DNA of 64,000 bases from Macrostomum lignano (GCA_002269645.1 NIVC01001804.1:42978-106977), one strand, 5' to 3'; numbered from the stretch's first letter, positions 1 through 52,749 are shown. Made by a program: numbers and translations. The notes: generated from the sequence alone by a model not told the origin.

Positions 1-415
1 AGCTGACTTGGCGTGAAAGCTGGTCAACTTTCTGTGGCACAACACGATACAGGCTGTTTCTCATCCAAACAGGGTTCCTCTGCAAGTGGTCGCTCACATT
101 TGTCATGATAGTACTGAGGTCGAGCTCACGGAAGTTTTTCTCGATGAAATCGCAAACAGTCTGCACGTACAGCGAACCCGTGTTGATGCTTCTAAAGGCG
201 ACTGAGCCTGGACTGTTGGCGTAGCAGACCAGAAAGTCGCTCTCTGGGGTACAGACTGTGAGGTTGTACCTTGTTTCCTCTCGCGAATAGGAAGCAAAAG
301 TTCGATCCTGGCGGCTTCCGCGACCGGCCTGAATGAAGAACACCTTTGGCTTTCCTTCTAGGCTTCGGCAGACAGAGGTCTGTGATGCGATGGTAGTGGC
401 GGTAAAGTCTTCAGC
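1..415 (-). CDS. P1 last exon: caspase C-terminal part, KPKVFFIQAGRG plus small subunit
   Basis: My translation is AEDFTATTIASQTSVCRSLEGKPKVFFIQAGRGSRQD...SDFLVCYANSPGSVAFRSINTGSLYVQTVCDFIEKNF...PQKVDQLSRQVS, with no stop before position 1. It is collinear with 47922-48374. Confidence 0.88.
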
Positions 416-3400
416 CTTTCAATAGTGAATTCCAGTCTAGTCCAGACTTTTGCAAATGCGAGAAACCAATTCTTTTTCAGACAATATTACACTTTGTTTC
501 AATATCATACTCGTACATTTCTATACGGAGCTATTTGAATAACCCTATTATTGCATATATCTAGTAACCATAATAGAAGCTAAGCATGTATTTTTGGCTT
601 ACCTGAAACCTTTCGATCACTTTTCGAATTTCGTAGGGACACCCGTCCCTACCGTAGATGCAGTCGTGGCTGCCGTGCGCCATCAGGAAGCAGACAAAGC
701 TGCCGTGCTTGGCAAGGTCTCGTGACTTTTTAATCTCACTGAGGAAATCATCCAACTGCTCAGTAGTAAGGTCTTTTTTTATCTTGACGATGAAGCGCAG
801 CCTCTCGAATACCCGTTTCGCTTGTTCAACATCATGATCAGAACCCTTACGCTCTGTAATACTGAATGTGATGTCACTTCCGGACTCGTACCTGCTGATG
901 TTGATGATGAGGCAGTAGCCTTGCGGGTCCGTCACTGGATAGAAGTCTCCGTCGAGCCTGGAATGCAGCAGACGCTCAATATACTCGTAATTTTTTATAC
1001 TGACAACAAAAACATAAATTATGTAGTAGCACCTTGGTGGTTGATGTCGAACTATTTTGGCTCGCATAGCTCCGCTGAGGTTTCTAAAAAGTTTTTTTTC
1101 ATTGTCAAAAGGAAATTTATTTGAACTATTCAATGAGTGAATATTTGTTAGCAGTTTTCACTGGACAAATAAAGTAACATCGACTCACAAATCTGCTTCC
1201 TCCGCTTTATCATCTCTTGGTTCTTCCGAATGGTCCGTGACAATTTTTCGCCTAAAATGGTCAAAAAGCTTTGTAGTCTATTAGCTATGCTTTCAGAAGC
1301 TGTGTGTGCTGTAGCTGTGTGCTGTAGCTGTGTGTGCTGTAGCTGTGTGCTGTAGCTGTGTGTGCTGTAGCTGTGTGTGCTGTAGCTGTGTGTGCTGTAG
1401 CTGTGTGCTGTAGCTGTGTGTGCTGTAGCTGTGTGCTGTAGCTGTGTGTGCTGTAGCTGTGTGTGCTGTAGCTGTGTGTGCTGTAGCTGTGTGCTGTAGC
1501 TGTGTGTGCTGTAGCTGTGTGCTGTAGCTGTGTGTGCTGTAGCTGTGTGCTGTAGCTGTGTGTGCTGTAGCTGTGTGCTGTAGCTGTGTGTGCTGTAGCT
1601 GTGTGCTGTAGCTGTGTGTGCTGTAGCTGTGAGCTGTAGCTGTGTGTACTGTAGCTGTGTGTGCTGTAGCTGTGTGTGCTGTAGCTGTGGGTGCTGTAGC
1701 TGTGTGTGCTGTAGCTGTGTGTGCTGTGCTGTAGATGCGTGCTGTAGCTATGTGCTGTAGCTGTGTATGCTGTAGCTGTGTGTCCTGAAGGAACTCACGG
1801 CAGTGCCAGAGGCTCGTTGAAGTAAATCTTGCCTTCGTAACTAAAATTGCAGAGTGGAGTCTGAAGTCAGGGGAATAGAGGATGAGCGCCCTTGCTCCAT
1901 GCTTCACTCTATGTTTTATCGATCTTCATTCTGTTTAACTGTCGAGCTTGCAACTTTCCAATTCTTTACCGTAATAATACAGAAAAGTACTACAAAAACT
2001 GCCCCATTTTACGAGCGTAAGTTAAAACTATTTTTTCACAGCAAAATGCTTGCTGCGCTGAAGTCTCACCATAGACCGTATATTCCATGGGCCACTCACT
2101 ATTAAAACTACTCGTATGTAAAAATTAAACCACTTTAAAGCTCACTTTCAGGGAGGTTAATGACATAGATTTTATTTTCGGGATTTAATCGATCACTTTC
2201 CCGGACATATTGCAAGGATTATTGTATGTACCTAAATAAGCGAGCTTCTCTCTTCTCTTCCTTCGTGACTCGAGAAATTTCTTAATGAAATTTTGTCTAT
2301 GGTAAGAATGTGGGGGCTTCGCCTCTACACCCCCAGCAGGGGCTTCGCCCCCACACCCCAATCCCCAACTTCAACCATAGACATACAAGTACCCCGAAAA
2401 AAGCTGGAAAAATCTTTAGGCCGACCACAGTCGCTGAAAGTTTAAGTTCAGTAGCTGAGGGACATAGAAAGTATTTTTGCAATGGAGAAGAAATATAAAT
2501 TTATTTCAGTTGCACGAAGATACAGAAACTTCACAACCGCTAAAAAGACTGCCGTATATGAAAGTAAGTGAAAAAATTTGACACTTTTCTGTAAAAGCGG
2601 CAAACCTTTTAGGCAGACTTGAATATGCCTCTGCTTCTGCTTCTTGGAAACTCAGAACTTTGTGGTCCTTGACGATGAGTTTTCCGATGACAGCTTGGTT
2701 GCCGAGACAGCAGTTTAGGTCACGCAAGCGCTAATCTTTAATCAAGAACTAACAGAAGCCTTTAGTTGTTGGCACCATGATCTCACGCAGGGCCGTCTGG
2801 AGGTCATTGAACGACTTGCTTCCAGGTTTGTCTGGCGCCGCGCTATCTGCCGATTTTTCGTATAGAGCCGGCGACAGTCGCAGCAGCAAGACTTGAGCTC
2901 GTGCGGCTGGATCCCAGTTGAACAATGCGGCTCCAATCTCAAAGCCAACGATCCAAATTGGCCGTCTCCTCGAGTCTTCCAACCTCAGACATGCCCGACG
3001 TTGGACTCCACTTTGGGTGACGCTCTGGTTATCACTCGGAGTTGCTCGTGACTGGGGGCTGCTTGAAGACACTGCTCCATTGCGGCTTGCAGAAATTGTA
3101 GCCGAATTGGTCCTTGCCTGTGCAAAAGACTTTGTTGGATCCCCTGCTGTCTTGGCTGGCTCCTTGCTCATTGCGTCAGGTTAGAATCGCTGCGACGCCA
3201 ATACTACTACTGAGGCTGTGTTTATTTGAGTTGCAGCTCGCAGCCGATAAACTACGTATATTTCTGCTCAGCCGTAGGCCGTGCTCCAGAGCTTTCTATC
3301 TTAATAAATCTAAATATACTAAATCTCTAATATTTGTTTGTTTGTTTGTTTGTTTGTATGTTTGTCCATAACGCTCTAGAGATTGCAATTCTTCACCGAT

Positions 3401-6400
3401 TTTGATCGCGTTTTCGTCAAAAGATTCGAAATTGTCTAATAATAATAATTGTCTAATATGATTGTGTAAACAATCATAGAAGCGTCATGTAAACAGTCAT
3501 AGAAGCGTCATGGAAGAATAAAAGAAGCGTCATGTAAAAATCAAAAGAAGCGTCATGTCAGACATGAAAGAAGTGTAATGTAAAAATTAAATGAAGCTAT
3601 TGTGCTGTGCTGGGGAGACTTACTGAGATGTCAAGGCTCACGGAGAATAACTGAGATTACGGAGGGGGGTTTCTGAGATGTCAAAGCAAAAGTCAGAAAC
3701 TACTTCAAAGTACATGTACTTTACTCAAATTTTTTATTACATTCTTTGTTGGCTCGCCACGGGGGGGCGCTGATAGAAGAAGAGTCATGTAAAAAAGAAA
3801 AGAAGCACTATGTATACATAAAAGAAGAGTCATGTCGAAGTTAAAAGATTCATTTGGGAATTGCTACGATGTCAAGGCTTGGAGGGAATCGCTATAGTGC
3901 TGTGATTCTTGAAGAAAGAATCACTAAATTGTCAAGGCTTAGGGGAAAAGAATTGCTGAGATTTCAAGGCTTTTATAGGTTGGGTTAAAGTTAGGTTTAG
4001 GTCAGGTTTGGGTTGAGGGTTAGATTTTAGCGGGTTTCAAAGTTAACAGGGGATTTTTCAGATATCGAGGTTTATGGGGGGCATTGCTGACATTTCAAGG
4101 CTTACGGGGGAAATAGCTGAGATGTCAAGGTTCATGGGGGAATAAATGAGATGTCAAGGCTAAAGTCAGAAGCTACATGTAGTCTATTGAAAACTTTTTT
4201 TCATTATTTGTTGGCTCCTCACGGGAGGGAGGGATCGCTGATAGAAAAAGCGTAATGTAAAAAATAAGAAGCTTAATGTCGAAGTTAAGAGATTCATTTG
4301 GGAATCCCTACGATGTCGAGGCTTGCAGGGAATCGCTATAATGCTGTAGTGCTATAATGACTGTTGGAGAGAATTACTGAAATGTCAATGCTTTAGGGTT
4401 AGGGTTAGGGTTAGGGTTAGGGTTAGGGTTAGGGTAAGGTTAGGGTTGGAAGGTTGACAGATTTTTTTTAGATTTCAAGGCTTTTTGGGGGCATTGCTGA
4501 GATGTCAAGGGGGAAGTTGATATGTTAAAGCTTGTGGGGGGGGAATTACTGACATATCAAGGCTTACAAGGGACTTCTGATATATATTGCAAAAAGATTC
4601 TACATGTACTTTATTACAAAGCTTGTACTGCATTTTTGGCTCCCCGACGCTAAGATACTAAGCTAAAAAATACTACTAGCGCTTTACAAACTTATGCAGA
4701 TGTCAGGCTGTAGGGTTAGTGTTCGGGTTGGTATTAGGGTTTAGGTTTAGGGTTAGGTTCAGGGTTATTGCGTTAAGATTCGTGTTAGGGTTAGGGTTAG
4801 AGTAGCTTATAACTTAGCTCATGTAGCTTATTAAAAATGTTTATCATGGAAGCATCATGCAAAAACAATGGAAGCGTCATATAAAAATCATAGAAGCATC
4901 ATGCAACAACCCATGGACAAAATATTGAATTTAGGGTTTTGGTTAGGATTTGGGTTAGTGTTAGAAGTTTGACAGGAGATTTTTTAAGATTTCAAGACTA
5001 CATGTAGCTTATTAAAAAACGCGTATTGCATTTCTTTGGCTCCCCAACGGGGGGCGTAGATTGCTAGTTAGCTTCTAAATTATTATGAGCATAGTAAACT
5101 TCCAACTAAGAAAAATACATTAGCCTGTGTTCTGAATTTTTATGTATGGCCAAGCTACTACAAAAATGTGAAAAATGCCCACTCAGAGCAACTGCAGTCA
5201 GCTGCTCAATATTCAATCATAATTTACAGCACATATAGTTTTCATGCATACATTCTCAGACATTCTCATTCTCAGTCGCCATGAAAACTCACCCACGCAG
5301 CAGCTCAGCCAGTCTCCAGTTTCTCTTTTGTGTGGCCAAGGCTAGCGCAGTCCTATACTTATTGTTCTTCAGGCTCCAATCCGCCCCTGAGTCCAGCAGA
5401 ACCTGACTGACGTGCTGGGGCGCCCAGCAGGTGACTGCCTGTATGAGGGGTGTGTATTCACACTGATTCCTCGCATTGGCGGAGGCTCCGGCAGCCAGCA
5501 GAGCGGAAGCTGCGGCAGAATTGCCATCTTTGACTGCATGATGCAAACAACTGTCAGCAGCAGTATTCGCACAGGTGGGATCACCAAGCTCCACCAGCTG
5601 CTTCCACAGAGCCTCATCACTCCTCCAAGCTTCGTTCATCGCAATATAACCCCGTCTGTCATAAGCATCCATCTCCACCAGCTTCATCCGATCCTCAGCA
5701 TTGAGCTGAGCTACGCCCATCAACGCGGTGAGACCCAAAAAGTCAGGCAGGTCGCAGCTGTCGCGGGTCGCTGCTCGTCGCAGTCCCACCAAGTCGCGCG
5801 CGTTCACCAGCCGCTGCAGCTTCTGTCGATCCGCCTCCTCCTGCAAAGACGAACGGAAACTTTGAGCACAGCTACTCAGCTGCTGCAACATCAGCACCGC
5901 AGATTCCACTCACCTGAGCTGTCAGACCGGAGATAGTGCCATATTCATCCACAACTAGCCGCATCTCCCTGCAACAGCAAAAATGAGCAGCGATGCGAAT
6001 ATGCAATTTTCTAAAATATGACAATTCCGATTGACAAAAAATTTACTTTAATAAGGTCTAGATAATTTTTCATGATAAATTTAGTAAATGGAAATTCCTA
6101 CTTATCTGAGCTGCTTACAGATGGAGTTTCCAAGAGGACTGCAGCAGCTCTGCAACAATCAGCATTGGCGAGAGCGCATCCGACTTCTCACACGCAGCTC
6201 ATTTTCCATTTCTGCAGCATTAGTTTCCTTCCATCTCACAATGTCTCACAAAGCACTCACGCACAGCCTCCCAGTTCTCCATCTGCAGCTCAACCCACAC
6301 ACTCTCACTGCACACCGAGGCCCTACAGCTTCCATTCTTGACTGAGATCAACCGGCACCCCATTGGCTGGGAGGCAGCCAGCTTATCAAGCAGCGAACTG

Positions 6401-7245
6401 CTCACTCACCGCTTGATGTAGCTGGCCAGCTCTGAGTGGCCGCTGAGCCTCGCCAGTGCGGACGCTGTCCAATCTTCGAGATCTTTCAGTCTGAGCAGCC
6501 GCGACCTCTTCGAGTTTCTGTGCTGTCTGCATTCATTGAACCTGTCCTGCCTCAGCAGGTGCAGCAGGTGCTTGGCGCATTTCCAGCTTCCAGTCCGCGC
6601 CGCCTCCATCAGCGGAGTGGCGCCGTTGTCATTCCGCAGCCACTTCGCATCGAACGACAGCAGCGTCAGCAGCCGCAGGTGGTCCCGCCGGGCTGCCAGG
6701 TGCGCAGCCGTGTTGCCGTTCGCGTCAGCTGCCTTGGGGATTGCGCCCAGCTCAAATAAGTACAAGATGCACTTTTCAGTGTGCACGGGAGTCTCAGGAG
6801 CGTCGGCCACCAGCATGAGGACGGTCCGACGATCTGCATCAGCGCTGGTGACCAGCTGGCGCGTTGCCAGCCGCCGCACCTTGCCGAAGTCACCTTGGAT
6901 GACGAGCTTGGCGAGAGTGTGGAGATCGGCTGGTGAGTCTCCGACGCTTTCCCGGTTGCTGGGGTCCGGCTTAGTGAGTTGCTGCAACTGCAATTAAAGC
7001 ATCTCTAACCTAAGTGCAAATCTTAGCACTGAAGTATTTTAGGAGACTTGAATTTACGAGCGTATGAGCTACTGGAGTAGCTGAGAGATGACTAATTTAT
7101 TACTAATTATTAGTTACTAATTACAGATTACTAGTCAATTTCAATAACTTCAACTTACCGCTCTGTCAGAGAACATGGTTATTTTTTCGCTTTCTGACGA
7201 AGTGCTTGACGTGCTCAAAGAGCTTGAACTTGAAGAGCTGGACAT
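1..7245 (-). CDS. P1: ankyrin-ankyrin-pseudocaspase (catalytic Cys to Gly), 8 exons, last exon runs off the window start
   Basis: Manual exon chain: 7245-7159 (87 nt), 6987-6410 (578), 5968-5914 (55), 5840-5293 (548), 1840-1799 (42), 1251-1189 (63), 1083-603 (481), 415-<1. All junctions are AG/GT and the phases match (0,2,0,2,2,2,0). The frame is open throughout (756 codons inside the window). The structure is the same as P3. Confidence 0.78.
603..1083 (-). CDS. P1 exon 7: caspase large subunit (peptidase C14)
   Basis: Contains PQGYCLIINISRY, ERKGSDHDV and SFVCFLMAHG (catalytic His). Donor is CAG|GTAAGC at 603/602; acceptor is TTTTAG|A at 1084/1083. Confidence 0.88.
1293..1785 (+). repeat. 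13/15-bp minisatellite (TG)nCTGTAGC in P1 intron 5
   Basis: Tandem TGTGTGCTGTAGC / TGTGTGTGCTGTAGC units. The same repeat occupies the equivalent intron of P3. Confidence 0.95.
2506..3171 (-). mobile_element. Degenerate LTR-retrotransposon gag-like fragment inside P1 intron 4
   Basis: WIVGFEIGAALFNWDPAARAQVLLLRLSPALYEK...SFNDLQTALREIM resembles retrotransposon gag and is broken by stops. Recognised by eye only. Confidence 0.4.
3309..5067 (+). mobile_element. Non-autonomous Helitron-like element in P1 intron 4
   Basis: The 5' end is A|TCTAAATATACTAAA followed by a TTTG microsatellite. The 3' end is a hairpin (GCTCCCCAACGGGGGGC), then GATTGCTAG|T at 5064-5068. The termini match the family at 21056-35974. 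Confidence 0.65.
4393..4445 (+). repeat. Interstitial telomeric-type (TTAGGG)n tract
   Basis: Seven perfect TTAGGG units (4393-4434), then TAAGG and one more unit. Degenerate units also occur at about 3985-4030 and 4710-4800. Confidence 0.9.
5293..5840 (-). CDS. P1 exon 4: second ankyrin-repeat domain (ANK-A)
   Basis: DSCLHHAVKDGNSAAASALLAAGASANARN and YTPLIQAV motifs. Acceptor CTTTGCAG|GAG; donor GG|GTGAGT, which contains the ORF-track stop. Confidence 0.88.
6410..6987 (-). CDS. P1 exon 2: first ankyrin-repeat domain (ANK-B)
   Basis: NTAAHLAARRDH and GATPLMEAARTG motifs. 578 nt, as in all five copies in the window. Donor CG|GTGAGT. Confidence 0.88.
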
Positions 7246-8862
7246 GGCAAAGCGCAGGGTGCTTGTTGGCGCAGGATGGCTGGGAAGTTCGGCATTGGGG
7301 CGGGGCAGGGACCTCTGCGGCAGATTTTATTGCTTTGGCTGCTCGCGGAGGACTGGCTGAGCGGCTTTGCTGTTCATCTCTTGCATTGTACTGAAGACCA
7401 GATAGGCAGGCTGCACAGTGCGCAATACGATGCATATTTTATGCTGTGCTGTGAAACAATAACTTCTCTTCTCATCTCACCCGTCTCTCTAATTAGCAAC
7501 AGTCTTTCAAAAGCTGAGGTTAGCATTATCTAAAAATGGGCTTGCTGCCAGGACCATTAAATAGACAATGGGCAGGTATCCAATGGGCCGTTGGAAATTT
7601 AATTTTCTTCACGAATGCCAGAATGTTTTTTGTAATATAAAACAACGAATGAACAAAATACGCTCGTAGTAGCAATTATAACGGTTAGAATAAATCGGCT
7701 TCAACGAATTATCACTACAATCAATTTAAAGACGCCACAACCCTCCCACTCTCAATCTCCATCTCGTAGGCTAAACGTTTGCATTTTTCTCAGCAGGTGG
7801 TACAGTATTCTGACCTGTCGATCCAAAAGGGTGGCCAACGCGAACATCTGATAAGTTGACCCTGCAACCAATGCATTCCAGGCATAAAAAAGTTCGATCG
7901 CTCAATCTCGATTGGCTATTGTCGATTTAGGCTGCCCATTGTCGAGATCAGTATCTTACCAAATGGTATGTAGGTGTGTCATCGCTATTGGCTTGATTTG
8001 TGGCATCCTGACCTGACTCCATATCCACAAAGAATTGTGTTGTGTCGTGTAACTTGACAGGCCAACTTCATTATAATTATTACGCTAATGTTTCTGGTAT
8101 AACGTAAATGCTAATTATAGTATTAATATTATTCCTGTCATTTACTTATACTGCCACTTTAAGTAGAGTAGTTGATAAAGTACCTGTACAATTTATCATT
8201 AATCACGCTACATCTTTGGCTCTTGAATTTATCGATCGTGCAGTTTCTCTAGCGTGAATAAAATATCGATCATGTCGTTTTTCTAAAATGCTAAATACAC
8301 TAAAGACTAAAATATATATAAAGCAACTGTGCGCACCTAGAAATTTACTCTGCAACTCATCTGGAAACTTCAAGTCTCGGCTATACAACAAATTGCAGTT
8401 GAACGACAAATCAATTTCATCAATATGGACTAAATTTCCACGAGTAGAAAGTGGTTAAAACCTGCTCCGGTTAGTTAGTTTTTGATGCCTTATCTGATTT
8501 TCCAACACTGCACATCTGTTTATATAGGCCTATGACATTTGAACTTTTACAAATCCTCTTGCTCTTTGAAATCTTTGCAGTTTGACGTGTGTATGCCGAT
8601 GTCTATGGCCAGAAAGTCAGAGGTCACATATAACGGTCTCGAGGCGAGCGAGATGAGACTATACCTTTTAGTTTTAACAATTTTTTTGGACATTAGTGAA
8701 GTTAATTTAGTCATTAGTCAGCTCAGTCCTAGAAAAGTCATAGACTATAGACTATATAGACCATAGACTATAGTTAAGAAATGAAATCGATTTAGTCAAG
8801 TGCCACGTATTTAAACCTTTCCATGACTTGATTTTAGTCAAAGTGAATTTTATTTAGTCATC

Positions 8863-9522
8863 ATGGCGGCAGAGTTCATGGCTTGCAAAGTTTGGTTGCA
8901 GAGTTCATGGCTGAACTGTCTGCATTGGTTGATGAGCCGTTCTGCCTTCTGCCGTTCATCAAGCCTGCAGCTGACCAAGTTGTCCAGTTACTTTGATCGC
9001 TCGACTGGAGAACGACTACAGGATGAAGTGATTTACACTTTATTGTATGTCTTGGGAGAGCGCGGTCAAGAGCACCTCCAACACCTTCGTCAGAGAGACA
9101 TACTCGTAGAAAAAGAAGACGGCGACGGCAAGAAGTATTACGAGCTACCTAACCTCAGAACCAAGAACCAGAGTGCCAATCCAGTCAAGGCCAAAGGTTT
9201 CAACACAAAGCAAGCGAGAATCTATGGCGGTCAGTATGAACTCATTAAGACCTACCTTCAAGTCCTGCCCAACGAAACCAAGGACAATTCGTTTTTTCCA
9301 AGACCGATGGCAAATAAAGAAGGACAGCTGCAGTTTTCAACTAAGCAGGTTCGTGGGATCAATTGGTTAGGATCGTTCATGACTCGATTAAGCACCCTGT
9401 GTGAGCTCAGCAAAAAGTATACGAACCATTGCATTCGAGTAATCCATAGCTACTGGGAAAACACTTGGTACTTGGCAGTTTCTGTTGGGAGCGCGAGGTT
9501 TTCCAGCACGCGGTTCATCACG

Positions 9523-9540
<18 letters not shown>
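8863..9540 (+). mobile_element. Crypton-like tyrosine recombinase fragment (DUF3504/KCTD1-ZMYM-like), truncated
   Basis: GERGQE...TKN...RIY...YELIKTYL...FFPRP...GINWLGSFM...KKYTNHCIR matches the Crypton YR pattern. The final catalytic His/Tyr segment is absent. Confidence 0.6.
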
Positions 9541-9553
<13 letters not shown>

Positions 9554-9700
9554 TGACTGACTGACTGACTGACTGACTGACTGACTGACTGACTGACTGA
9601 CTGACTGACTGACTGACTGACTGACTGACTGACTGACTGACTGACTGACTGACTGACTGACTGACTGACTGACTGACTGACTGACTGACTGACTGACTGA
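9528..9700 (+). repeat. (ACTG)n microsatellite, about 43 units
   Basis: A pure tetranucleotide run at the point where the Crypton fragment and the Mab-21 reading frame converge. Confidence 0.97.
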
Positions 9701-10822
9701 TGGTCGGACCAAAAGCAAAACTTCCACGCCGAGTCGCGGCTGCTCAGATGCCACATCACGAACTCCACAGTCGCTTCAGTCGCCGACTTCTCACGAGACC
9801 AAGCGATGCCTCTGCTTACCGAGTGACCTGAGCACGAGCTCACGACTCTCTCTGCAGTTTCTCGGTCATCAAACTTCAGGCAAGCCAGCGCTCTGAGAGC
9901 CTCCCGTGCTGAGAGGGCGCAGTCTGGCAGTCTGGCAATCAGCTCTGTGAGCGACTCCTGAGATCGCTGGCTGCAGTCACTGCGCGAGAGACGCACCAGA
10001 CACTCTCTCACCACGTCGTAGATCTGATAGTACTCGAGAGCACTGGACTTCGCGAGGGGCATCGGACTCAGATCCGGCAGGATTTGGAACGGGTGGAAGT
10101 AGAATGTGCCTGAGTCGCTCACAGGTCTGAGACTGCCGATGAACTGCTGCAGCAGTTGGGGCAGCCGATCGATTACTGTTCTCAGTGTGCTCATGATGCG
10201 GTCCAAATGCTGGTCCGCTCTCTCCTTAGCCGCACCCTTGAGGTAGATGGCCGCATCGCTGAGAAAGAAATGGTTCATGATGCGACCCCGAGATCGGTCA
10301 GGTGTGTCAGGTGTTTGTCCTGCTCTCGGCTCTTCTCCACACAGTCGAGCAGCATCTGCAGCGACTGTCTCGTGAGACTCACGAGGTTCTCCTTCTTCCA
10401 CTGCTCGACCGGCGTCTCATCCACCATTCGGAAGGTGATGGTCTTCACGTGGTAGGACTTCAAGCCTCGCTGATTGAAGCCATCTTTGTGACAGATGACC
10501 TTCTTGACCAGGTATTTGAGTGTGACGAACAGTTGGCCTTGCAGGGTAGTGAGACTTCGCAGCATCCGGTTCTCCAGGAAGCTGGTGCTCACGCGGAGCT
10601 CTTCGCCTCCTCGGTCAGGAGAGGCTGCGTACACCACGTGACAGGGCGATGAGTCGGAGGTGAGAACCTCCTGGAGAGCCTCCAGCACAGGATGGGGGAT
10701 GTTGGAGATGCGGTTTGGCAGCAGCGGCGCGATGGGCGGGTAGCGGCAGAGACGGCATGCAGAGACATTGTCCAGCGCTGGCTTCAGTGTGCATCCGGGC
10801 GTCGGATAAGCAGGATTTGAGG
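9700..10822 (-). CDS. Mab-21 domain and helical C-terminal region, split across two frames
   Basis: ORF 10275-10901 has CHVV...LRVSTSFLENRMLRSL...LFVTLKYLVKK...LKSYHVKTITFRMVDETPVEQWKKENL. The expected continuation GRIMNHFF lies in ORF 9526-10401, a different frame. Confidence 0.78.
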
Positions 10823-13800
10823 CTGTAAAAACGATTCGGTTCCCGATCGGGAAAAATACAACTTTGAGTCTGTGCAGTGATGCTTTGGACTGAAATACCA
10901 AAACCGCTCAAACAAATGGCACGATATTTGCAGCCACCCTAAACTCACTACGGAGAAGGTCTTTGTTACCTTAAAATTCTTTAAATTCGAGTTCTTCTTA
11001 CCTAAAAGTGCAAAAAAGCTACGAGCTAACTTGCGTAATTTTTAACTGAATCCTCCGTAGCGTTGCTCCACTTTTACCAATGCTACTCAAACATGACACT
11101 TAAAATCTTGCCAAGTTTTCTTAAATTCTTGCCAGAATGGACTAATCCCAGCACACGGAACTCAAGGACATAATTGAACCGTTTGTTGTGAACCTTCTTA
11201 AACAAAAACTTCTACTGTCCATTTGCACTTTTAATATTGAATTATATTTTACCACTCCTCACGTGTTCTTTATTAGTTTTGCTGATGTTTTGCATCCCTA
11301 CACTGCTTAGTTTCTGTAGAACACTTAAACAGTATCATTACTTTTCTCTCGTACGAGTTTGCCACCGCTTCTTATCATTTTACATCAAAGCTACATATTA
11401 ATCCCAACTCCTTGCCTCCGATTATAAAATGCAAATGTATCACCTCTATCCTAACTATTAACAAGCTTTGTTTGAGCATGACTTCAGATTTCAGAATTTC
11501 ATGCTTAAAAAAGATCCAGAGTTAAAAGTCCGCAGGTTGCAACAGCTTGCACATAATAAATGCATGTTGCCAACACAGACCGTCAGGACAGTCAGGCTCT
11601 TGTTTAGATCTGCTTACTGAGCTTAGCTATACTATCGCATACAGAATGTTCTACACCAATGCTTTACACGCTAAAAGCAAACGTCTCTAGCAATCACTAA
11701 CTGAACTATTAGACCATCTCATTCCCAAAGAGAGAACTCACCGAATCCTGAACACTGAATGTGCCCGTTCACCAACTCGTGCTGCTCCGGAGCTCCATCG
11801 CACTCGCACAGGCCTCTCTGGTGGTATTCTCGGCCGGGAGTCAACTCTATCACATCAATATCGGAATTGGCGTCAGTTCTGCCGTTCAGTGTCGTCAAGC
11901 TGTTGCCCCAGCCTTCTGAGTAGCTGCCGACGACAAAGTATGAAGGGTTTCTCAGTCGACTTCTTAGAATCTGCTGCAGGGCATCAGCAGCCGCGCTCTG
12001 CAATGCGGCTCGGGATTCGGTGAAGCCTGACTGCTCCAGTGCCGAGTGAAGCTGCTCGCTCAGCTCTGAGTCGCTGGGACTGCATCTAAAATGTGAGTTG
12101 ATGGTGAAAAACGTGCAGGCGTCTAGAATGGTTAGTTGAATAATTTGTGCTTAAATTTGAATTTTAGCTCGTATTTGACTAGCATAAGGCAGCAGTCTTA
12201 AACAGTGCATGAATTGATATCATGGCAGTTGATCCTTTTAGTCCTTTTAGTTTTAGTATATGAATTTAGTTTTTTTATCGGCCGCAGCAGACTTGTCTGT
12301 GTCTATGACTTAATGTGAGCCGCGCTGTACGTTAAATAAGATTTATATGTAAAGAGGCAAAGCTGGCAAGAAAGCCAAAAGAAAATACAAAGAAACTGTG
12401 GGAGCAAAGACTCTCGAAAGAACCACAACATAACAGTGGCATCGCGAGCAGGATCAACTACAGGCATGAGTAAGCAAGGCGAAAAAATAGTCGGCTCCCC
12501 TACAAAAGCAGGAGCAGGTCCACCGGCTGGCCAGTTGACCAAGGCAGCAGTCTCTGTTGTCAAGACTCCAGTTATTGAAATTTAGAGAAATTTTTTACAT
12601 GTTTTGTTCCTGAAAATTTTCCAATTTCCATAACTCGCTATGCAGTGTCTGTCGTATGGTTAGCACGTAGGAAGTGTTGATAAAACGATGAGGATTTGAG
12701 ACTAGATTTTTGCACTGGAGGTGGGATGGGGCAGGCTGGAGGTGAAGGTCGTGAAATCCACATTCACACTGCATATACTTCTGAGTCACCGATAAACCTT
12801 GTGAGCATTGATATCAGCCATGTCATTCCATATTGACTCAGCATTTTGCAAGCTTTTGCTTTCCACTGCTTGTGTGTTGTTCCAACTTCTAAAACTGCCT
12901 ATCATTACCGCTTGCTTGTACAATTACACAATTTTCTTCGAAGTCGTAAAAACTCGAAAAGGAATAAAAGACGATGAAAAAAACAAATCAAAGGACTGAA
13001 ACTTACCCAAATTGTGACTGTTTTTGTGGCTCTTCCACAGCAACTGTATTTTTAGCCACTTCTTGAAGATTACTGTGCTCAACCTTGGCGTCAGCTTGTG
13101 CTTTGATGAGTGAGCTCACAACTTGGTGGTGACCAATCTGTGATGCAATGTAGAGAGTTGAAACGCCTTGGATTTGTTGAAGATTGACGTAAGCTTGTGC
13201 CTTGATGAGTGAGCTCACAACTTGGTGGTGACCATACTGTGATGCAATGTAGAGAGTTGAAACGCCTTGGATTTGTTGAAGATTGACGTAAGCTTGTGCC
13301 TTGATGAGTGAGCTCACAACTTGGTGGTGACCATACTGTGATGCAATGTAGAGAGTTGAAACGCCTTGGATTTGTTGAAGATCGACGTCAGCTTGTGCTT
13401 TGATGAGTGAGCTTACAACTTGGTGGTGACCATTCTGTGATGCAATTAGGAGAGGTGAGCAGCCATCGCTTCGTTGAAGATTGACGTCAGCTTGTGCTTT
13501 GATGAGTGAGCTCACAACTTGGTGCTGACCTTGCTTTGATGCAATGTAGAGAGGTGACTCGCCAGTGTTTCGTTGAAGATTGACGTCAGCTTGTGCTTTG
13601 ATGAGTGAGATCACTACTTGGTGGTGACCTTTCTGTGATGCAACGTAGAGAGGTGAGCAGCCACTGACTTCTTGAAGATTGACGTCAGCTTGTGCTTTGA
13701 TGAGTGAGCTCACAACTTGGTGGTGACCAAAATGTGATGCAATGTAGAGAGGTGACTCGCCAGTGTTTCGTTGAAGATTGACGTCAGCTTGTGCTTTGAT

Positions 13801-15054: not shown

Positions 15055-15265
15055 TTTGGTTCGTTATCGGTGCTGTGGAATGCGGAGAGCGCCGCATTTT
15101 GCTGGAATTTATCTATTATTGCTCATTTGCGTCACAATTGTCTGCCATTGGCAGCGCTGCCACCGCCAATTGAAATAAATGAGGCTTGGGTGCGGTTCTG
15201 CTTGGCTACAGAATTATAAGCTGCATAAAATGCAGTCATAAGAATAATTGCTAATCTAGCTGCTG

Positions 15266-15322
15266 CTGTCTGTCTGTCTGTGTGTCTGACTTAGTGTCCG
15301 TCTTAGTGTCTGTCTGTCTATA

Positions 15323-15395
<73 letters not shown>

Positions 15396-15432
15396 GGCTG
15401 TCTGTCTGTATATCTGTCTCTCTGTCTGTCTG
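15266..15432 (+). repeat. (TCTG)n microsatellite upstream of the ANK-Mab-21 start
   Basis: Imperfect TCTG run. Confidence 0.9.
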
Positions 15433-15489
15433 TCTATAATGCTATACACAGGCACACACTCATACAGATGCTCACACAGGGTGTACAGC

Positions 15490-47921: not shown

Positions 47922-48374
47922 CTAAACTTTCCGAGCTCTTTCTGGATCGAAGCTAACAAGTCGTGAAAGCTGGTCGACCTTCTGCGGCGTAAGATGAAAT
48001 AGGCCGTCTTCCATCCGAACTTTCGTTTGCTGCAAGTGGCCGCTTACCACAGTCATGATGGTATTTAGGTCGAGCTCACGAAAGTTTTCCTCGATGAAAT
48101 CGCAAACAGTCTGCACGTACACCGAACCCGTGTCGGGGCTTCTAAAGGCGGCTGAGCCTGGAATATTGGCATAGCAAACCAAAACGTCGCCCTTTTCGGG
48201 AAGAACTGCAGTGTTGCACACTGGAGCGGGTGCCTCATCCGTTTCTACACGAGAATTGGGCAGAACAACTTGGTCGCGATGGCTTCCGCGACAGGCCTGG
48301 ATGAAGAACACCTTTGGCTTTCCTTCGAGGCTGCGGCAGACAGACGTCTGTGAAGTGGTGGTGAAGTCTTGGGC
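47922..48374 (-). CDS. P3 last exon: QACRG, VETD linker, small subunit
   Basis: AQDFTTTSQTSVCRSLEGKPKVFFIQACRG...SRVETDEAP...GDVLVCYA...FRSPDTGSVYVQTVC. Confidence 0.92.
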   Translation of the reverse strand, partial: AQDFTTTSQTSVCRSLEGKPKVFFIQACRGSHRDQVVLPNSRVETDEAPAPVCNTAVLPEKGDVLVCYANIPGSAAFRSPDTGSVYVQTVCDFIEENFRELDLNTIMTVVSGHLQQTKVRMEDGLFHLTPQKVDQLSRLVSFDPERARKV

Positions 48375-51300
48375 CTTTGAAACAATAAGTATGCAGTGTA
48401 CACTAGACTTTTCTAAATGCGAAAAACAAGTTCATTCTACGTGACCTACGCGCACTCGTTACCTTGGCCGTTAATTTAAACTTTCGCTTCAAATGACCCT
48501 TCTATTGATTCAATATTATGCATTTCTATTTGGGAGAATTTTAATATTACAATTTTTGTTTATGTCTTGATAAAAATATAAAAGATGATATTCTTGGCAA
48601 TACGCTCGTAGTTGGGCTTACCTGGAACCTATCAGTCAGATATTGAATGTGGTAGGGCAACCCGTCCCTACCGTAGATGCAGTCTTGGCTGCCGTGCGCC
48701 ATCATGAAGCAGACAAAGCTGCCGTGCTTGGCAAGGTCAGGTGATTTCTTTATCTCACTGAGGAAATCATCTATCTCCGCAGCAGTGAGGTTCTCTTTTA
48801 TCCAGACGATGAAGCGCAGACTCTCGAATACCTGTTTTACTCGTTCAACATCGCGAACCGAACCTTGACGCTCTTTGTGACTGAATGTGATGTGACTTCC
48901 GGAGTCGTACCTGCTGATGTTGATGATCAGGCAGTAGCCTTGCGGGTCCGTAACTGGATAGAAATTTCCTTTGAGCCTGGAATGCAGCAGATGCTCAATA
49001 TCTCGTATACATGTACTTTCTATTGTATCAAGGCCAAACAATACAATGTAGTGGCACCTTGAGCGTTGAGGTTGGACTGGTCTGCCACGCACAGCTTCTG
49101 TAGGATTTCTAAAAGATTTTCATATTGACATAGGAATAAATTCAATATAGGCTGGTATATTGAATATTTGTAAGCACTTCCCCAAGACCACGAGAAAAAT
49201 ATCTTTAACTTTGACTCACCGATCGGGTTCATCATCGCTTGGTTCCTCGCCAGGGGCATGGTCCGTGAAAACGTTTCGTCTGAAATGGCCAAAAAGGGTA
49301 AGCAGTTCTCTCAGCTGTGTGCTGTAGCTGTGTGCTGTAGCTGTGTGTGCTGTAGCTGTGTGTGTGTGTGTGTGTGTGCTGTAGCTGTGTGTGCTGTAGC
49401 TGTGTGCTGTAGCTGTGTGCTGTAGCTGTGTGCTGTAGCTGTGTGTGCTGTAGCTGTGTGTGCTGTAGCTGTGTGCTGTAGATGTATGCTGTAGCTGTGT
49501 GTGCTGTAGCTGTGTGTGCTGTGGCTGTGTGTGCTGTGGCTGTGTGTGCTGTGGCTGTGTGTGCTGTAGCTGTGTGTGCTGTGGCTGTGTGTGCTGTGGC
49601 TATGTGTGCTGAGGCTGTGTACTGAGGGAACTCACGGCAGTGCCAGAGGCTTGTCGAAGTAAATCTTGCCGTCGTACCTAAAAGGCAGTGCGGTTTCTGA
49701 AGTCAGGGAAAGTTGCGTGAGCCGATGCTCTTTGTTAAAATCTATCTGTTTTATCGATTGTCATTCTGTTGAATTTGTGGTTATCGTGCAGCAGCCGTAA
49801 ATTACGAGCTTTATACTCAACAGCATTGAAAAAGTCGCCACTCTGCACCAGTGAACAATTTCTCTTAAACTATTCTGAAATCAAAAAAATACGAGAAAAC
49901 TGAGGGCTAGCTTTAATTCGTCCTCGCACCGTCCGATTCCCCCCACTTCATTCCTCAACCCAAGTATGTGGCGTGGCGTAGCCAAAGTTGCATTACTAGC
50001 AAGACTGAGAGACTTCATCTGCACACTCGAAGGTGGCGACCATAGACGGAATCTTTCAGATGCTGCTGAGTATATATTGTTACTATGGTTTACCATAATA
50101 CTTGTATGTCTATGGTTGAAGTTGGGATGGGGGTGTGGGGGCGAAGCCCCCACATTCTTACCATAGAAAAAAATTTCATTAAGAAATTTCTCGAGTCACG
50201 AAGGAAGAGAAGAGAGAAGCTCGCTTATTTAGATACATATAATAATCCTTGCAATATGTCCGGGAAAGTGATCGATTAAATCCCGCAAAATAAAATCTAT
50301 GTCAATAACCTCCCTGAAAGTGAGCTTTAAATTGGTTTAATGACATTAACTGCCCGCTAATTTGCATTAAAGCAAGTTTGACTCCTGCAAGCGGGCTTAA
50401 ACGTAGTCTATGGGATTAAAAAGCAAGAATAAGTGCCCAGCGGGCACAAAGGTCATGGTACAATGCAAATTAGCGGGCAATTATGTCATTAACTGCCCGC
50501 TAATTTTGTCCCACTTTGTCAAGGACACAAATGTCTATGTTTATGGCACAATAATAGTAATACCCATGCTTTGCGGGCGTTAATGAGAAATCCTCCTAAC
50601 GCCGCCCTCTGATTTTCCCATTACGCTCGTAACGCCCTTCAAGCATGGGTATTAATGTACTATCACTCCTTGTCTTTGAGTTATTTTAATAATTGAATCA
50701 TTTACTGTTTGTCAATGATAGATCAAAGTCAGAGAGACATTCTCAGTCGCCATGGAAACTCACCCACGCAGCAGCTCAGCCAGTTCCTTCCTACCCTCCT
50801 TTTTGGCCAAATCCAGCGCAGTCCTGCCGCGCCCGTCCTTCAGGCTCCAATCCACCCCCGAGTCCAGCAGAACCCGACCGACTGCGGCGGCGGTGGCGGG
50901 GGGCGCATGGATGGCTGCCCACGAGAGGGCCGTGGATTCCCACTGATTCCTGGCATTGGCGGAGGCTCCGGCAGCCAGCAGAGCGGAGGCTGCGGCAGAA
51001 TTGCCAGCCCTGGCTGCATGGTGCAGACAACTGCAAGCCCATATATTCGCACAGGTGGGGTCACCCAGCTGCACCAGCTGCTTCCACAGAGCCTCATCAC
51101 GGCACGAGCTGTTCCGAGCTGCGTACATCAGTGCGGTGAAACCCCAGTTGTCAGGCAGGTCGCAGCGGCCGCGGGTCACCGCTCGCCGTAGCCTCGCCGA
51201 GTCGCCCGCTTCGGCCAGCCGCTGCAGTTCCTTTCGATCCGCCTCCTCCTGCAAAAGCAAGCGGGAAATTTGAGCACAGCTGCTCAGCTGCAGCCGCATC

Positions 51301-52749
51301 GGCACCGCAGATGCCGCTCACCTGGGCTGTCAGGCCGGAGATATAGCCATTTTTTCCCACAACCAGCCGCATCTCCCTGCAACAGTAAAAAAGTGAGCGG
51401 CAAATTTGCAATTTTCCTAAATCTGACAACTGGCCGCCAAAATTAAAATTTATTATTTACCATAGAAGTTTTATGGTAAATTTTAGAAAATATAAACTGG
51501 CAATTAGGCGGTTAAGGCCCCTTCGGGGGACCTGTACCTCCTTGTATGCCCCAGAGTATTTGTGAGACATTTGTGAAAAAGCATCCCCCAGATGGCAAGT
51601 ATATCCCAAAAACAAGCACCCGGATCCCCGATATAAATGCAACATAGTTTTGAAGCTAAAAATGGAATAAAGAATTTAAATAAACTACATGTAGCTTCTG
51701 AGCTTTAAGTCTTGACATCTCAGCAATTCCCCATGAGCCTTGACATCTCAGCAATTCCATTATGAGCCTTGTCATCTCAGCAATTCCATTATGAGCCTTG
51801 ACATCTTTGCAATTGGCCTTGACATCTCATCAATTCCCCCCAAGGTTCGCTTTTAAATGTGTCACACAGACACTCACTCTTGGTATATATTGGATTCCTA
51901 ATTATCTAATTAGCTGCTCACAGATGGACTTTTCAAAAGAACTGCAGCAGCGAACTGCTCACTCACCGCTCGATGTAGCTGGCCAGCTCTGAGTGGCCGC
52001 TGAGCCTCGCCAGGTCCGACGCCGTCCGACCCTCGCGATTTTTCAGTCCGAGCAGCCGCGACCTCTTCGAGTTTCCGTGCTGTCTGCACTCATTGAACAT
52101 TGCCTGCCTGAGCAGGTGCAGCAGGTGCTTGGCGCATTTCCAGCTTCCAGTCCGCGCCGCCTCCATCAGCGGAGTGGCGCCGTTGTCGTTCCGCAGCCAC
52201 TTCGCATCGAACGACAGCAGCGTCAGCAGCCGCAGGTGGTCCCGCCGGGCTGCCAGGTGCGCAGCCGTGTCACCGTTCGCGTCAGCCGCCTTGGAGTTCG
52301 CGCCCAGCTTAAATAAGTACAAGATGCACTTTTCAGTGTGCACGGGAGTCTCAGGAGCGTCGGCCACCAGCATGAGGACGGTCCGACGAGCTGCATCAGC
52401 TCTGGTGACCAGCTGGCGCGTTGCCAGCCGCCGCACCTGTCCGAAGTCACCTCGGATGGCGTCGTGGGCGAGAGTCTGGAGATCGGCTGGTGAGTCTCCG
52501 ACGCTTTCCCGGTTGCTGGGGTCCGGCTGAGTGAGTTTCTGCAACTGCAATTGAGACACCTGGGAGTTACATCAAAGTACTGAAATTTTTTGAGTCAACT
52601 TGCACAAGCAACCGGAGTCGCCGACTGTAGATAATTACTACTACATGTATTCAGTTTCTGTCGCTTCAACTTACCGCAGAGTTAGGGAAGTCGGTAATTA
52701 TTTCTTCGTCTTCTGACGATGAATCAGAATCGTCTGAGGAGCTTGACAT
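47922..52749 (-). CDS. P3: ankyrin-ankyrin-caspase, 8 exons, 744 aa, catalytic His/Cys intact
   Basis: Exons: 52749-52675 (75 nt), 52544-51967 (578; alternative acceptor 52559), 51376-51322 (55), 51248-50764 (485), 49677-49636 (42), 49279-49220 (60), 49108-48622 (487), 48374-47922 (453). Total 2235 nt = 745 codons, all AG/GT with matching phases. Contains MAHG and QACRG. Confidence 0.82.
48622..49108 (-). CDS. P3 exon 7: caspase large subunit
   Basis: PQGYCLIINISRY, ERQGSVRDV, SFVCFMMAHG; donor CAG|GTAAGC. Confidence 0.9.
49314..49622 (+). repeat. (TG)nCTGTAGC minisatellite in P3 intron 5
   Basis: Same unit as 1293-1785 in a shorter array. Confidence 0.93.
50764..51248 (-). CDS. P3 exon 4: ANK-A domain
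   Basis: CSCLHHAARAGNSAAASALLAAGASANARN; donor GG|GTGAGT. Confidence 0.87.
51967..52544 (-). CDS. P3 exon 2: ANK-B domain
   Basis: 578 nt; DTAAHLAARRDH, GATPLMEAARTG; donor CG|GTGAGT. Confidence 0.87.

What the first reader, a model, noticed from the sequence alone, without database searches (positions are those of the whole stretch)
280..415. P1 is a pseudocaspase: TGT to GGT at the catalytic Cys, plus loss of the linker cleavage site
Seen: codon 325-323 is GGT (QAGRG) where P3 has TGT (48293-48291, QACRG), a single-base change. The linker reads SREETRYN instead of SRVETDEA, so the Asp is also gone. The frame remains open across all exons in the window, and the His motif (MAHG) is kept. Established: VETD is the caspase-8 inter-subunit autocleavage motif. 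Inference: losing both features while keeping an open frame suggests a retained non-catalytic regulator rather than decay or a single sequencing error.
Basis: partly seen in the sequence, partly recalled or inferred. Interest (0 to 1): 0.8.

Follow-up and report, generated by a model that had tools for sequence, protein, structure and literature searches.

The report
Catalytically dead flatworm ANK-caspase paralogue
One gene in a flatworm family of ankyrin-repeat caspases has lost its catalytic cysteine and its self-cleavage site but is otherwise intact, annotated from transcripts and still conserved, so it is probably a non-cutting partner of its active sister enzymes, much as FLIP(L) partners caspase-8 in humans.

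Summary
The window is Macrostomum lignano contig NIVC01001804.1 (assembly Mlig_3_7). P1 is a nine-exon, 731-codon gene encoding an ankyrin (ANK) prodomain plus a caspase domain. All 16 splice sites are canonical, and the stop codon lies 36 nt beyond the window edge.

Codon 325-323 is GGT where 23 other M. lignano ANK-caspase sequences covering the site keep Cys. The linker Asp is lost through an in-frame 18-nt deletion (DEAPAP), not a simple substitution.

It is not a sequencing error. A second locus (NIVC01003438.1, 1% diverged) carries the same two lesions, and the GenBank models are transcript-derived.

It does not look like decay:
- P1 keeps 41 of 42 family-invariant caspase residues, missing only the Cys.
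- dN/dS in the caspase domain is 0.39 on the P1 clade. This matches its active paralogues, and neutrality is rejected (p=0.0003).
- On the two branches that post-date the mutation, dN/dS is 0.29 (p=0.037).

The most likely role is a FLIP(L)-like non-catalytic partner of the active paralogues. That role is inferred, not shown. P1 is an independently evolved new member of a known kind, the pseudo-caspases. Interest is moderate.

The parts
7159..7245 (-). P1 exon 1 (ATG; MSSSSSSSSLSTSS...SDRA), donor gtaagt
   Evidence: identical to the start of GenBank model P0047
6410..6987 (-). P1 exon 2, first ankyrin block
   Evidence: Pfam Ank_2 E=2e-17; exon mapping
5914..5968 (-). P1 exon 3 (55 nt, EMRLVVDEYGTISGLTAQ)
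5293..5840 (-). P1 exon 4, second ankyrin block. It carries a P1-specific 24-aa insertion (about 5621-5705).
   Evidence: Pfam Ank_2 E=9e-9; alignment
1799..1840 (-). P1 exon 5 (42 nt, prodomain-caspase linker)
1189..1251 (-). P1 exon 6 (63 nt). It contains the conserved IVTD|H motif at 1244-1233, a candidate prodomain cleavage site (inference).
1033..1083 (-). P1 exon 7 (51 nt)
603..957 (-). P1 exon 8, large-subunit (p20) part of the caspase domain. Catalytic His is kept (MAHG; His codon 677-675). The Arg equivalent to caspase-3 Arg64 is kept (TERKGS).
   Evidence: Pfam Peptidase_C14 E=2e-40; caspase-3 alignment
1..379 (-). P1 exon 9, end of p20 plus the small subunit (p10). It runs 38 nt past the window edge to a TGA stop.
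   Evidence: L006 is identical to the window and supplies the last 12 codons and the stop
323..325 (-). GGT = Gly in place of the catalytic Cys (QAGRG)
   Evidence: the only deviation of P1 from 42 family-invariant columns
263..286 (-). Shortened inter-subunit linker SREETRYN. An 18-nt in-frame deletion removed the conserved Asp and five following residues (DEAPAP). The junction is around 272-268.
47922..52749 (-). P3, the intact comparator: nine exons, 708 aa, QACRG (TGT 48293-48291), linker SRVETD|EA

Best explanation
P1 is a real, full-length gene of Macrostomum lignano. It belongs to a lineage-specific family of caspases whose prodomain is made of ankyrin (ANK) repeats.

Two lesions hit the protease domain. 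A T>G change replaced the catalytic Cys with Gly, so there is no nucleophile and no proteolysis; this follows from established caspase chemistry. An in-frame 18-nt deletion removed the conserved (E/Q)-T-D|E-A site in the linker between the large and small subunits, so the protein can no longer be cut there.

Everything else that defines the fold and the Asp-binding pocket is kept, and the domain is still under purifying selection.

Inferred mechanism: P1 folds like a single-chain procaspase. It co-assembles with its active paralogues through the shared ANK prodomain and an unchanged C-terminal strand, VVPQKVDQLSR. By position that strand is probably the caspase dimer interface. The resulting complexes would have one active site instead of two, which would tune or block activation, as FLIP(L) does for caspase-8. 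P1 might also bind Asp-containing substrates without cutting them.

My likelihoods: dead enzyme about 0.9; retained by selection about 0.65; FLIP(L)-like partner mechanism about 0.4.
For: Shown:
- Gly sits on caspase-3 Cys163. His121, Arg64, Gln161 and Arg207 equivalents are kept.
- The gene has nine exons with GT..AG at all eight introns, 731 codons and a stop.
- The exon structure matches three active paralogues.
- A second locus, 1% diverged, has the same GGT and the same deletion.
- GenBank models at both loci come from a transcript-only annotation.
- Of 27 M. lignano ANK-caspase sequences covering the site, only the four P1 models lack Cys.
- Of 42 caspase-domain columns invariant in 13 other family members from at least 7 subfamilies, P1 deviates only at the Cys.

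My own codon maximum-likelihood model on the caspase domain:
- P1 stem: dN/dS 0.415; neutrality rejected, p=0.0024.
- Whole P1 clade: 0.39, p=0.0003; not different from background 0.46 (p=0.56).
- The two tips that post-date the lesions: 0.29, p=0.037.

Other points:
- The caspase-like domain is the more constrained part of P1. Its ANK region has dN/dS 0.68.
- Neutral simulation: at 0.03 substitutions per site, about 11% of runs keep the ORF open and about 35% keep the 35 essential splice and start bases. The P1 stem is roughly 0.19 synonymous substitutions per site.
- VVPQKVDQLSR is identical in P1 and all six close paralogues.
- FLIP(L) is the precedent for a dead caspase paralogue that heterodimerises with its active relative.
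Against: - No protein-level data exist: no activity, binding or phenotype.
- The timing of Cys>Gly on the long P1 stem is unknown, so the stem dN/dS may mostly pre-date the lesion.
- The strictly post-lesion test rests on 12 substitutions (6 nonsynonymous, 6 synonymous) and is marginal.
- P1's caspase domain has 2-3 times more unique changes than its closest Cys-bearing relative P13. The counts are 64 vs 19 nucleotides and 28 vs 6 amino acids (p about 1e-4 to 1e-6). This could be relaxation or neofunctionalisation after inactivation, or gene conversion of P13.
- The family as a whole evolves fast (background dN/dS about 0.45), so 'no different from background' is a weak bar.
- Paralogue gene conversion is evident in the region and can distort branch tests.
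- The codon model is home-made and uses 7 sequences.
- Transcript support cannot be assigned to copy A or copy B.
- FLIP(L) is cleaved in its linker, whereas P1 cannot be, so the analogy is incomplete.
Confidence: 0.5

Rival explanations
1. P1 is a recently inactivated duplicate drifting toward pseudogene status. It is tolerated because the genome holds many active ANK-caspase paralogues and extra chromosome copies. It looks intact only because too little time has passed.
For: - The family is large and redundant, with at least 7 clusters at 50% identity.
- The DV1 line has 180 Mb of duplicated blocks.
- Real decay occurs in this family: P13 on contig B carries an in-frame TAG.
- P1 shows an excess of unique changes relative to P13.
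- The post-lesion test is marginal (p=0.037).
- With only 21 differences between copies A and B, an intact ORF in both is not surprising. About 0.38 is expected by chance, from a 4.5% stop probability per substitution, which is my estimate.
Against: - dN/dS on the P1 stem and clade is 0.39-0.42. It is indistinguishable from active paralogues, and neutrality is rejected.
- 41 of 42 invariant residues are kept.
- All 16 splice sites, the start codon and 731 codons are intact at two loci.
- Neutral drift can have lasted at most about 0.02-0.03 substitutions per site, out of a stem of about 0.19.
- The second lesion is an exact in-frame deletion of the cleavage site, not a random disruption.
- The gene is present in a transcript-only annotation.
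Confidence: 0.25
2. Selection acts only on the ankyrin prodomain, for example as a scaffold or as a competitor for whatever recruits ANK-caspases and ANK-kinases. The dead caspase-like domain is a passenger with no role of its own.
For: - The same ANK module, about 70% identical, heads at least 20 protein-kinase paralogues. It is therefore a shared interaction module.
- Prodomain-only inhibitors are known in mammals (FLIP(S); CARD-only proteins, own knowledge).
Against: - In P1 the caspase-like domain is more constrained (dN/dS 0.39-0.43) than the ANK region (0.68).
- It keeps all invariant residues except the Cys.
- A passenger domain would be expected to accumulate stops or be lost. The window's truncated 'P2' copy (ANK exons only) shows that such truncation does happen here.
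Confidence: 0.12
3. The Gly codon is an assembly or sequencing artefact, and the real gene encodes Cys.
For: - The difference from TGT is a single base.
- ML2 and Mlig_3_7 share the same PacBio reads.
Against: - Two separate contigs, 1% diverged, both read GGT. Both also carry the 18-nt deletion, which is not a typical read error.
- The assembly was polished with Illumina genomic and RNA-seq reads.
- Four independent gene models show Gly.
Confidence: 0.02

Closest known systems
FLIP(L) (CFLAR long form), the vertebrate pseudo-caspase
   Same: Both are paralogues of active caspases that keep the full prodomain plus a caspase-like domain but lack the catalytic Cys. FLIP(L) works by heterodimerising with its active relative, procaspase-8. 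Published phylogeny places ANK caspases as sister to the DED caspases from which FLIP derives.
   Different: - The origin is independent: P1's nearest relatives are all M. lignano paralogues.
- The prodomain is ankyrin repeats, not tandem DEDs.
- FLIP(L) has lost both dyad residues (Arg315 and Tyr360). P1 keeps His and the whole Asp pocket and lost only the Cys.
- FLIP(L) is cleaved between its large and small pseudo-subunits. P1 has deleted that site.
C. elegans CSP-3 and CSP-2 (own knowledge, not checked here)
   Same: They are invertebrate caspase homologues without protease activity that bind the active caspase CED-3 zymogen and restrain its auto-activation.
   Different: CSP-3 is essentially a small-subunit-only protein. 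P1 is full length with a prodomain, and it differs from active paralogues at a single invariant residue plus the linker.
ANK caspases of parasitic flatworms (Horkan et al. 2024, PMC11463336)
   Same: The architecture is the same: ankyrin-repeat prodomain followed by a Peptidase_C14 domain, in Platyhelminthes.
   Different: - Those are presumed active initiators. No dead member is described in that paper.
- The paper states that ANK caspases are restricted to parasitic species. M. lignano is free-living.
- Common ancestry with the M. lignano family was not tested here.
Engineered procaspase-3 C163A/D175A-type mutants (dead, uncleavable zymogens used for crystallography)
   Same: P1 is a natural equivalent: the nucleophile is removed and the linker Asp is removed, in an otherwise native domain. 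The second-best PDB hit, 4jqy, is a procaspase-3 that reads QAARG at this motif.
   Different: Those are laboratory constructs of an executioner caspase without a long prodomain. P1 is a genomic gene with an ANK prodomain and a linker shortened by 6 residues.

Membership tests
Caspase family (Peptidase C14A) | Significant match to the caspase domain profile and to solved caspases across p20 and p10 | tested here: met
   Pfam PF00656 E=2.1e-40, covering 221 of 233 profile positions. Caspase-3 E=5e-29 and caspase-7 E=2e-25.
Caspase family (Peptidase C14A) | Catalytic His-Cys dyad | tested here: not met
   His is present (MAHG). Cys is replaced by Gly (QAGRG, GGT 325-323). P1 is therefore a homologue, not an active member.
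Caspase family (Peptidase C14A) | Asp-binding S1 pocket (Arg64, Gln161, Arg207 in caspase-3 numbering) | tested here: met
   All three align to identical residues in P1. They fall among the 41 family-invariant columns that P1 keeps.
Caspase family (Peptidase C14A) | Asp cleavage site in the inter-subunit linker | tested here: not met
   (E/Q)TD|EA is present in all six close paralogues, and an Asp is present in most distant subfamilies. It is deleted in both P1 copies.
Pseudoenzyme (pseudo-caspase) | Homologous to active enzymes but lacking an essential catalytic residue | tested here: met
Pseudoenzyme (pseudo-caspase) | Maintained as a gene: intact ORF, transcription, purifying selection | tested here: met
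   Intact 731-codon, nine-exon ORF at two loci. Transcript-only annotation. dN/dS 0.39, neutrality rejected at p=0.0003; post-lesion tips 0.29, p=0.037, which is marginal.
Pseudoenzyme (pseudo-caspase) | Demonstrated absence of activity and a non-catalytic function | not testable with these tools
   This needs recombinant protein assays and knock-down experiments.
FLIP / CFLAR | Tandem death-effector domains at the N-terminus | tested here: not met
   Pfam finds only ankyrin families in the prodomain exons.
FLIP / CFLAR | Orthology to vertebrate CFLAR | tested here: not met
   Among the 11 named top representatives in the 1.84-billion-protein library, 6 are M. lignano ANK-caspases (48-73% identity) and lead the list apart from a mite and a wasp protein at ranks 5-6. 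The non-Macrostomum hits (mite, wasp, fish, mammal) share 30-36% identity.
FLIP / CFLAR | Heterodimerises with the active paralogue | not testable with these tools
   The only indirect support is an identical C-terminal strand, VVPQKVDQLSR, in P1 and active paralogues. Assigning it to the dimer interface is my inference from position.
Platyhelminth ANK caspases (Horkan et al. 2024) | Ankyrin prodomain followed by a caspase domain | tested here: met
Platyhelminth ANK caspases (Horkan et al. 2024) | Monophyly with the neodermatan ANK-caspase clade | tested here: inconclusive
   No neodermatan sequence appeared among the ten nearest representatives that I could name. No phylogeny was built.
Unprocessed pseudogene | Frameshifts, stops or broken splice sites; dN/dS near 1; no transcript | tested here: not met
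   None of these were found. By contrast, the neighbouring paralogue P13 on contig B does have an in-frame TAG.

The most novel reading that the evidence does not exclude
The ankyrin module shared by at least 7 subfamilies of caspases and at least 20 protein kinases in M. lignano could be the recruitment or sensor domain of a lineage-specific cell-death or innate-immune signalling system. Its average dN/dS is about 1 or higher. It would replace the missing FADD/DED machinery, with caspase and kinase effectors playing roles analogous to caspase-8 and RIP kinases. P1 would be its independently evolved FLIP-like brake. A possible cGAS/Mab-21-like gene remnant lies next to P1.
Probability: 0.15. 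Interest if true: 0.75.

Novelty: new member of a known kind. Interest (0 to 1): 0.5.

Why it matters
Pseudo-caspases with a worked-out role are few. FLIP(L) is described as the only human one.

A second, independently evolved, full-length dead caspase would be informative for three reasons:
- It sits in a family reported as sister to the caspase-8 lineage.
- It occurs in an animal phylum reported to lack FADD.
- M. lignano supports transgenesis and, from my own knowledge, RNAi.

It would show whether 'a dead paralogue tunes the live one' is a recurrent solution in caspase signalling.

P1 is also close to a natural single-residue experiment, because the Cys is its only departure from 42 family-invariant positions.

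As a by-product, the data show that a free-living flatworm has a large ANK-caspase family. This qualifies the published statement that ANK caspases are restricted to parasitic flatworms.

Tried and rejected
- Look-ups of the UniRef models P0001 and P0007 in the contig index found nothing. The loci were reached later through the NCBI models P0012 and P0047.
- AlphaFold2 on the P1 caspase domain with a 7-sequence alignment gave mean pLDDT 49. That is unusable, so no fold search was run.
- Comparing exons with introns between copies A and B has no power. The 5' half is almost identical: 3 differences in 1268 exon nt and none in 685 nt of introns 1-3. Intron divergence in the 3' half is noisy because of microsatellites.
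I rejected it in favour of 379, which the transcript-derived model and all paralogues use.
- 'Asp>Arg substitution' was rejected in favour of an 18-nt deletion.
- A special caspase-8 affinity based on VETD was not borne out. Only P3 has Val there, and caspase-3/7 are the best PDB matches.
- Supplementary tables of Horkan et al. are not held, so I could not see which M. lignano sequences they used.
- Orthologues in other Macrostomum species could not be sought, because none appear in the protein collections.

Full report
**Where the window comes from.** The caspase domain of P1 matches only Macrostomum lignano proteins closely. The window's 7245..1 (reverse complement) is base-for-base identical to positions 10001-17245 of locus L006. 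That locus is contig NIVC01001804.1 (106,977 nt) of GenBank assembly GCA_002269645.1, known as Mlig_3_7, from the DV1 line.

**The observation.** On the minus strand, window 331-317 reads CAG GCC GGT CGC GGA (QAGRG), with GGT at 325-323. P3 reads CAG GCC TGT CGC GGA, with TGT at 48293-48291.
- A phmmer alignment to human caspase-3 (E=5e-29) puts the Gly on catalytic Cys163.
- The same alignment shows that the equivalents of His121 (MAHG), Arg64, Gln161 and Arg207 are kept.
- Pfam gives Peptidase_C14 at E=2e-40.
- Codon alignment with six paralogues shows that P1 lacks 18 nt. The sequence ...GAA ACG GAC GAG GCA CCC GCT CCG GTG TAC... has become ...GAA ACA AGG TAC.... This removes Asp-Glu-Ala-Pro-Ala-Pro and turns the following Val into Arg.
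- The active-site exon begins at 379 (cacag|ACC), so 380-415 of the reported interval is intron.

**The gene.** Three annotated paralogues (PAA93441, PAA68165, PAA93481) were mapped exactly onto their loci. They share a nine-exon structure. P1 has the same nine exons:

| Exon | Window coordinates (minus strand) |
|---|---|
| 1 | 7245-7159 |
| 2 | 6987-6410 |
| 3 | 5968-5914 |
| 4 | 5840-5293 |
| 5 | 1840-1799 |
| 6 | 1251-1189 |
| 7 | 1083-1033 |
| 8 | 957-603 |
| 9 | 379-1 |

- All eight introns have GT..AG, and the frame is continuous.
- The GenBank model P0047 (731 aa) equals my model plus FDPERAHKLRGF, followed by a TGA 36 nt beyond window position 1. No disabling mutation lies just outside the window.
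- The architecture is two ankyrin blocks, a short linker and the caspase-like domain.
- P3 (52749-47922) is an intact 708-aa counterpart.
- The window holds only these two caspase domains.

**Not an error, and transcribed.**
- A second locus, contig NIVC01003438.1 (L004, protein P0012), has identical exon lengths. It differs at 21 of 2158 coding nucleotides: 12 amino-acid changes and 8 synonymous changes. It carries the same GGT and the same 18-nt deletion.
- Two UniRef-only models, which I take to be from the older ML2 assembly, correspond to copy A (P0001) and copy B (P0007) and also read QAGRG.
- Mlig_3_7 was assembled from the same PacBio reads as ML2. It was then polished with Illumina genomic and RNA-seq reads.
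- Its GenBank annotation was derived only from transcript assemblies (StringTie/TACO plus a de novo transcriptome, with ORFs called by TransDecoder). Low-expression novel transcripts were discarded.
- The full nine-exon model therefore reflects a spliced transcript from at least one of the two copies.
- The DV1 line carries extra large chromosomes and 180 Mb of blocks at 95% identity or more. This explains the two copies.

**Decay or retention?** Five lines of evidence bear on this.
1. Catalytic Cys in the family. Of 27 M. lignano ANK-caspase sequences covering the active site, only the four P1 models lack Cys.
2. Invariant residues. I aligned 15 sequences from at least 7 subfamilies. In this alignment, 42 caspase-domain columns are invariant in all non-P1 sequences. 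P1 departs from them at exactly one, the Cys.
3. Pairwise rates. Nei-Gojobori dN/dS for P1 pairs in the caspase domain is 0.44-0.50, compared with 0.36-0.59 for pairs of active paralogues.
4. Branch model. I wrote a codon maximum-likelihood branch model. With seven sequences the best tree is ((P1A,P1B),P13). A five-sequence run gave the same picture.

| Branches tested (caspase domain) | dN/dS | Test against neutrality |
|---|---|---|
| P1 stem | 0.415 | rejected, p=0.0024 |
| Whole P1 clade | 0.39 | rejected, p=0.0003 |
| Two tips (post-date both lesions) | 0.29 | rejected, p=0.037 |
| Background | 0.46 | P1 clade not different, p=0.56 |

5. Neutral simulation. At 0.03 substitutions per site, about 11% of runs keep the ORF open and about 35% keep the essential splice and start bases. 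The P1 stem is about 0.19 synonymous substitutions per site by my conversion of the branch length.

**Points that cut the other way.**
- The moment of the Cys>Gly change on the stem is unknown.
- The tip test rests on 6 nonsynonymous and 6 synonymous changes.
- P1 has many more unique changes than P13: 64 vs 19 nucleotides and 28 vs 6 amino acids.
- The family evolves fast overall.
- Paralogue gene conversion is evident. P3 and P13 are positional counterparts on the two contigs, yet they are 81-90% identical in the gene body against 94-98% downstream.

**A useful contrast.** P13 (PAA51406, on contig B) is the closest relative that still has Cys and the ETD|EA site. It carries an in-frame TAG in exon 8 (FIVKVK*DL). 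A twin elsewhere (PAA71516) is intact. Real disablement in this family looks like that. P1 shows nothing of the kind.

**How it most likely works.**
- Established chemistry: without the thiol nucleophile a caspase cannot cleave.
- Shown: the linker site used for maturation is gone, while the Asp pocket, the His and the rest of the conserved core are kept.
- Inferred: P1 behaves as a permanently single-chain, zymogen-like subunit.
- Inferred: it co-assembles with active paralogues. The contacts would be the shared ANK prodomain and the C-terminal strand VVPQKVDQLSR, which is identical in all seven close sequences. By position that strand is probably the dimer interface.
- Inferred: the resulting heterodimers would have one active site and would modulate activation. 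This is the FLIP(L) principle.
- A conserved (I/V)(V/F)TD|H motif between prodomain and p20 is kept in P1 (1244-1233). P1 might therefore still be a substrate of its paralogues there. This too is inference.

**Comparison with what is known.**
- Horkan et al. 2024 describe ANK caspases as a clade sister to DED caspases. They describe it as restricted to parasitic flatworms, and for M. lignano they note only a kinase-prodomain caspase.
- No paper in the library describes a dead ANK caspase.
- The closest analogue is FLIP(L). P1 fails every FLIP membership criterion that could be tested: it has no DEDs, it is not an orthologue, its His is kept, and its linker is uncleavable rather than cleaved.
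- Catalytic-Cys-less caspase domains are not rare in sequence databases. Among 180 domains spanning the site in the 148 nearest library representatives, 10 lack Cys (Ser, Asn, Arg, Thr, Ile or Glu; none Gly).
- P1 is therefore a new, independently evolved member of a known kind.

**Verdict.**
- The regulatory role remains a hypothesis.
- Interest is moderate (0.5). It is a clean, testable pseudo-caspase in a tractable flatworm, but pseudoenzymes of this type have precedent, and the gene is already deposited as a hypothetical protein.

Noticed in passing
L005 8505-8859 (exon 8; TAG at about 8684-8686), contig NIVC01003438.1: P13 (PAA51406) is the closest Cys-bearing paralogue of P1. It has an in-frame stop (FIVKVK*DL), which is why its GenBank model stops at 498 aa. 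A twin, PAA71516 (698 aa), reads KVKEDL and is intact. Its branch dN/dS is 0.21, so the nonsense mutation is probably very recent.
   Followed up: partly
window 36420-37015, 39213-39808, 42005-42600 and 19816-20976 (minus strand): This is a truncated third family copy ('P2'). It has three identical tandem copies of a roughly 2.79-kb unit carrying ANK exon 2, then exons 3-5, but no caspase exons. Contig B shows one copy of the unit in the part retrieved. It may be a very recent tandem duplication or an assembly artefact.
   Followed up: partly
window 21304-23724 (minus strand): An 806-aa reverse-transcriptase ORF (Pfam RVT_1, E=6e-29) sits in the 15-kb gap between exon 2 and exon 3 of the truncated copy. 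It is surrounded by long 17-23-nt tandem arrays.
   Followed up: partly
window about 9500-12100 (minus strand), just upstream of P1: ORF 10275-10901 matches Mab-21_C (E=2.3e-5, just above the Pfam cut-off). ORF 11719-12003 has a GSYSEGWG...SDIDV nucleotidyltransferase-like motif (NTP_transf_2, only E=0.097). This may be a Mab-21/cGAS-like gene or a remnant of one. No gene is annotated there in GenBank.
   Followed up: partly
window 13003-15054 (minus strand): A 683-aa single ORF made of about 17 near-identical 33-aa ankyrin repeats (99-nt period, 89% matches). It is not in the GenBank gene list for this stretch.
   Followed up: no
window 4393-4447 and 4711-4800 (P1 intron 4): Interstitial TTAGGG telomere-type repeat arrays lie inside the 3.4-kb intron 4. 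This intron is 1.2 kb longer in copy A than in copy B.
   Followed up: no
ANK exons 2-4 of P1 and P3 (window) and of L001-L003: The ankyrin prodomain has an average dN/dS of about 1.06 across five paralogues. Excluding the P1 branch it is 1.3, and P1 itself is 0.68. This means either relaxed constraint or diversifying selection across the family. No site models were run.
   Followed up: partly
proteins P0016-P0046; L001 793-4635: The same ANK prodomain, about 70% identical to P1's, is fused to a protein-kinase domain in at least 20 M. lignano proteins. An ANK-kinase gene lies 5 kb upstream of the ANK-caspase in L001. This may explain the 'kinase-prodomain caspase' reported for this species.
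   Followed up: no
proteins P0015, P0024, P0050/P0198, P0051, P0054, P0061: M. lignano, a free-living flatworm, has at least 7 clusters (at 50% identity) of caspases related to P1. Most have ANK prodomains, although the literature states that ANK caspases are restricted to parasitic flatworms. One cluster (P0054/P0204) instead appears to carry a small-GTPase-like prodomain (VGDEKVGKTCLL...) and lacks the linker Asp region.
   Followed up: partly
window 48344-42576 versus L005 9312-14930: P3 (contig A) and P13 (contig B) occupy the same position relative to 94-98% identical downstream DNA. Their gene bodies are only 81-90% identical, whereas the P1 copies are 99% identical. The two contigs are mosaics, which suggests gene conversion or unequal exchange within the cluster.
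   Followed up: partly
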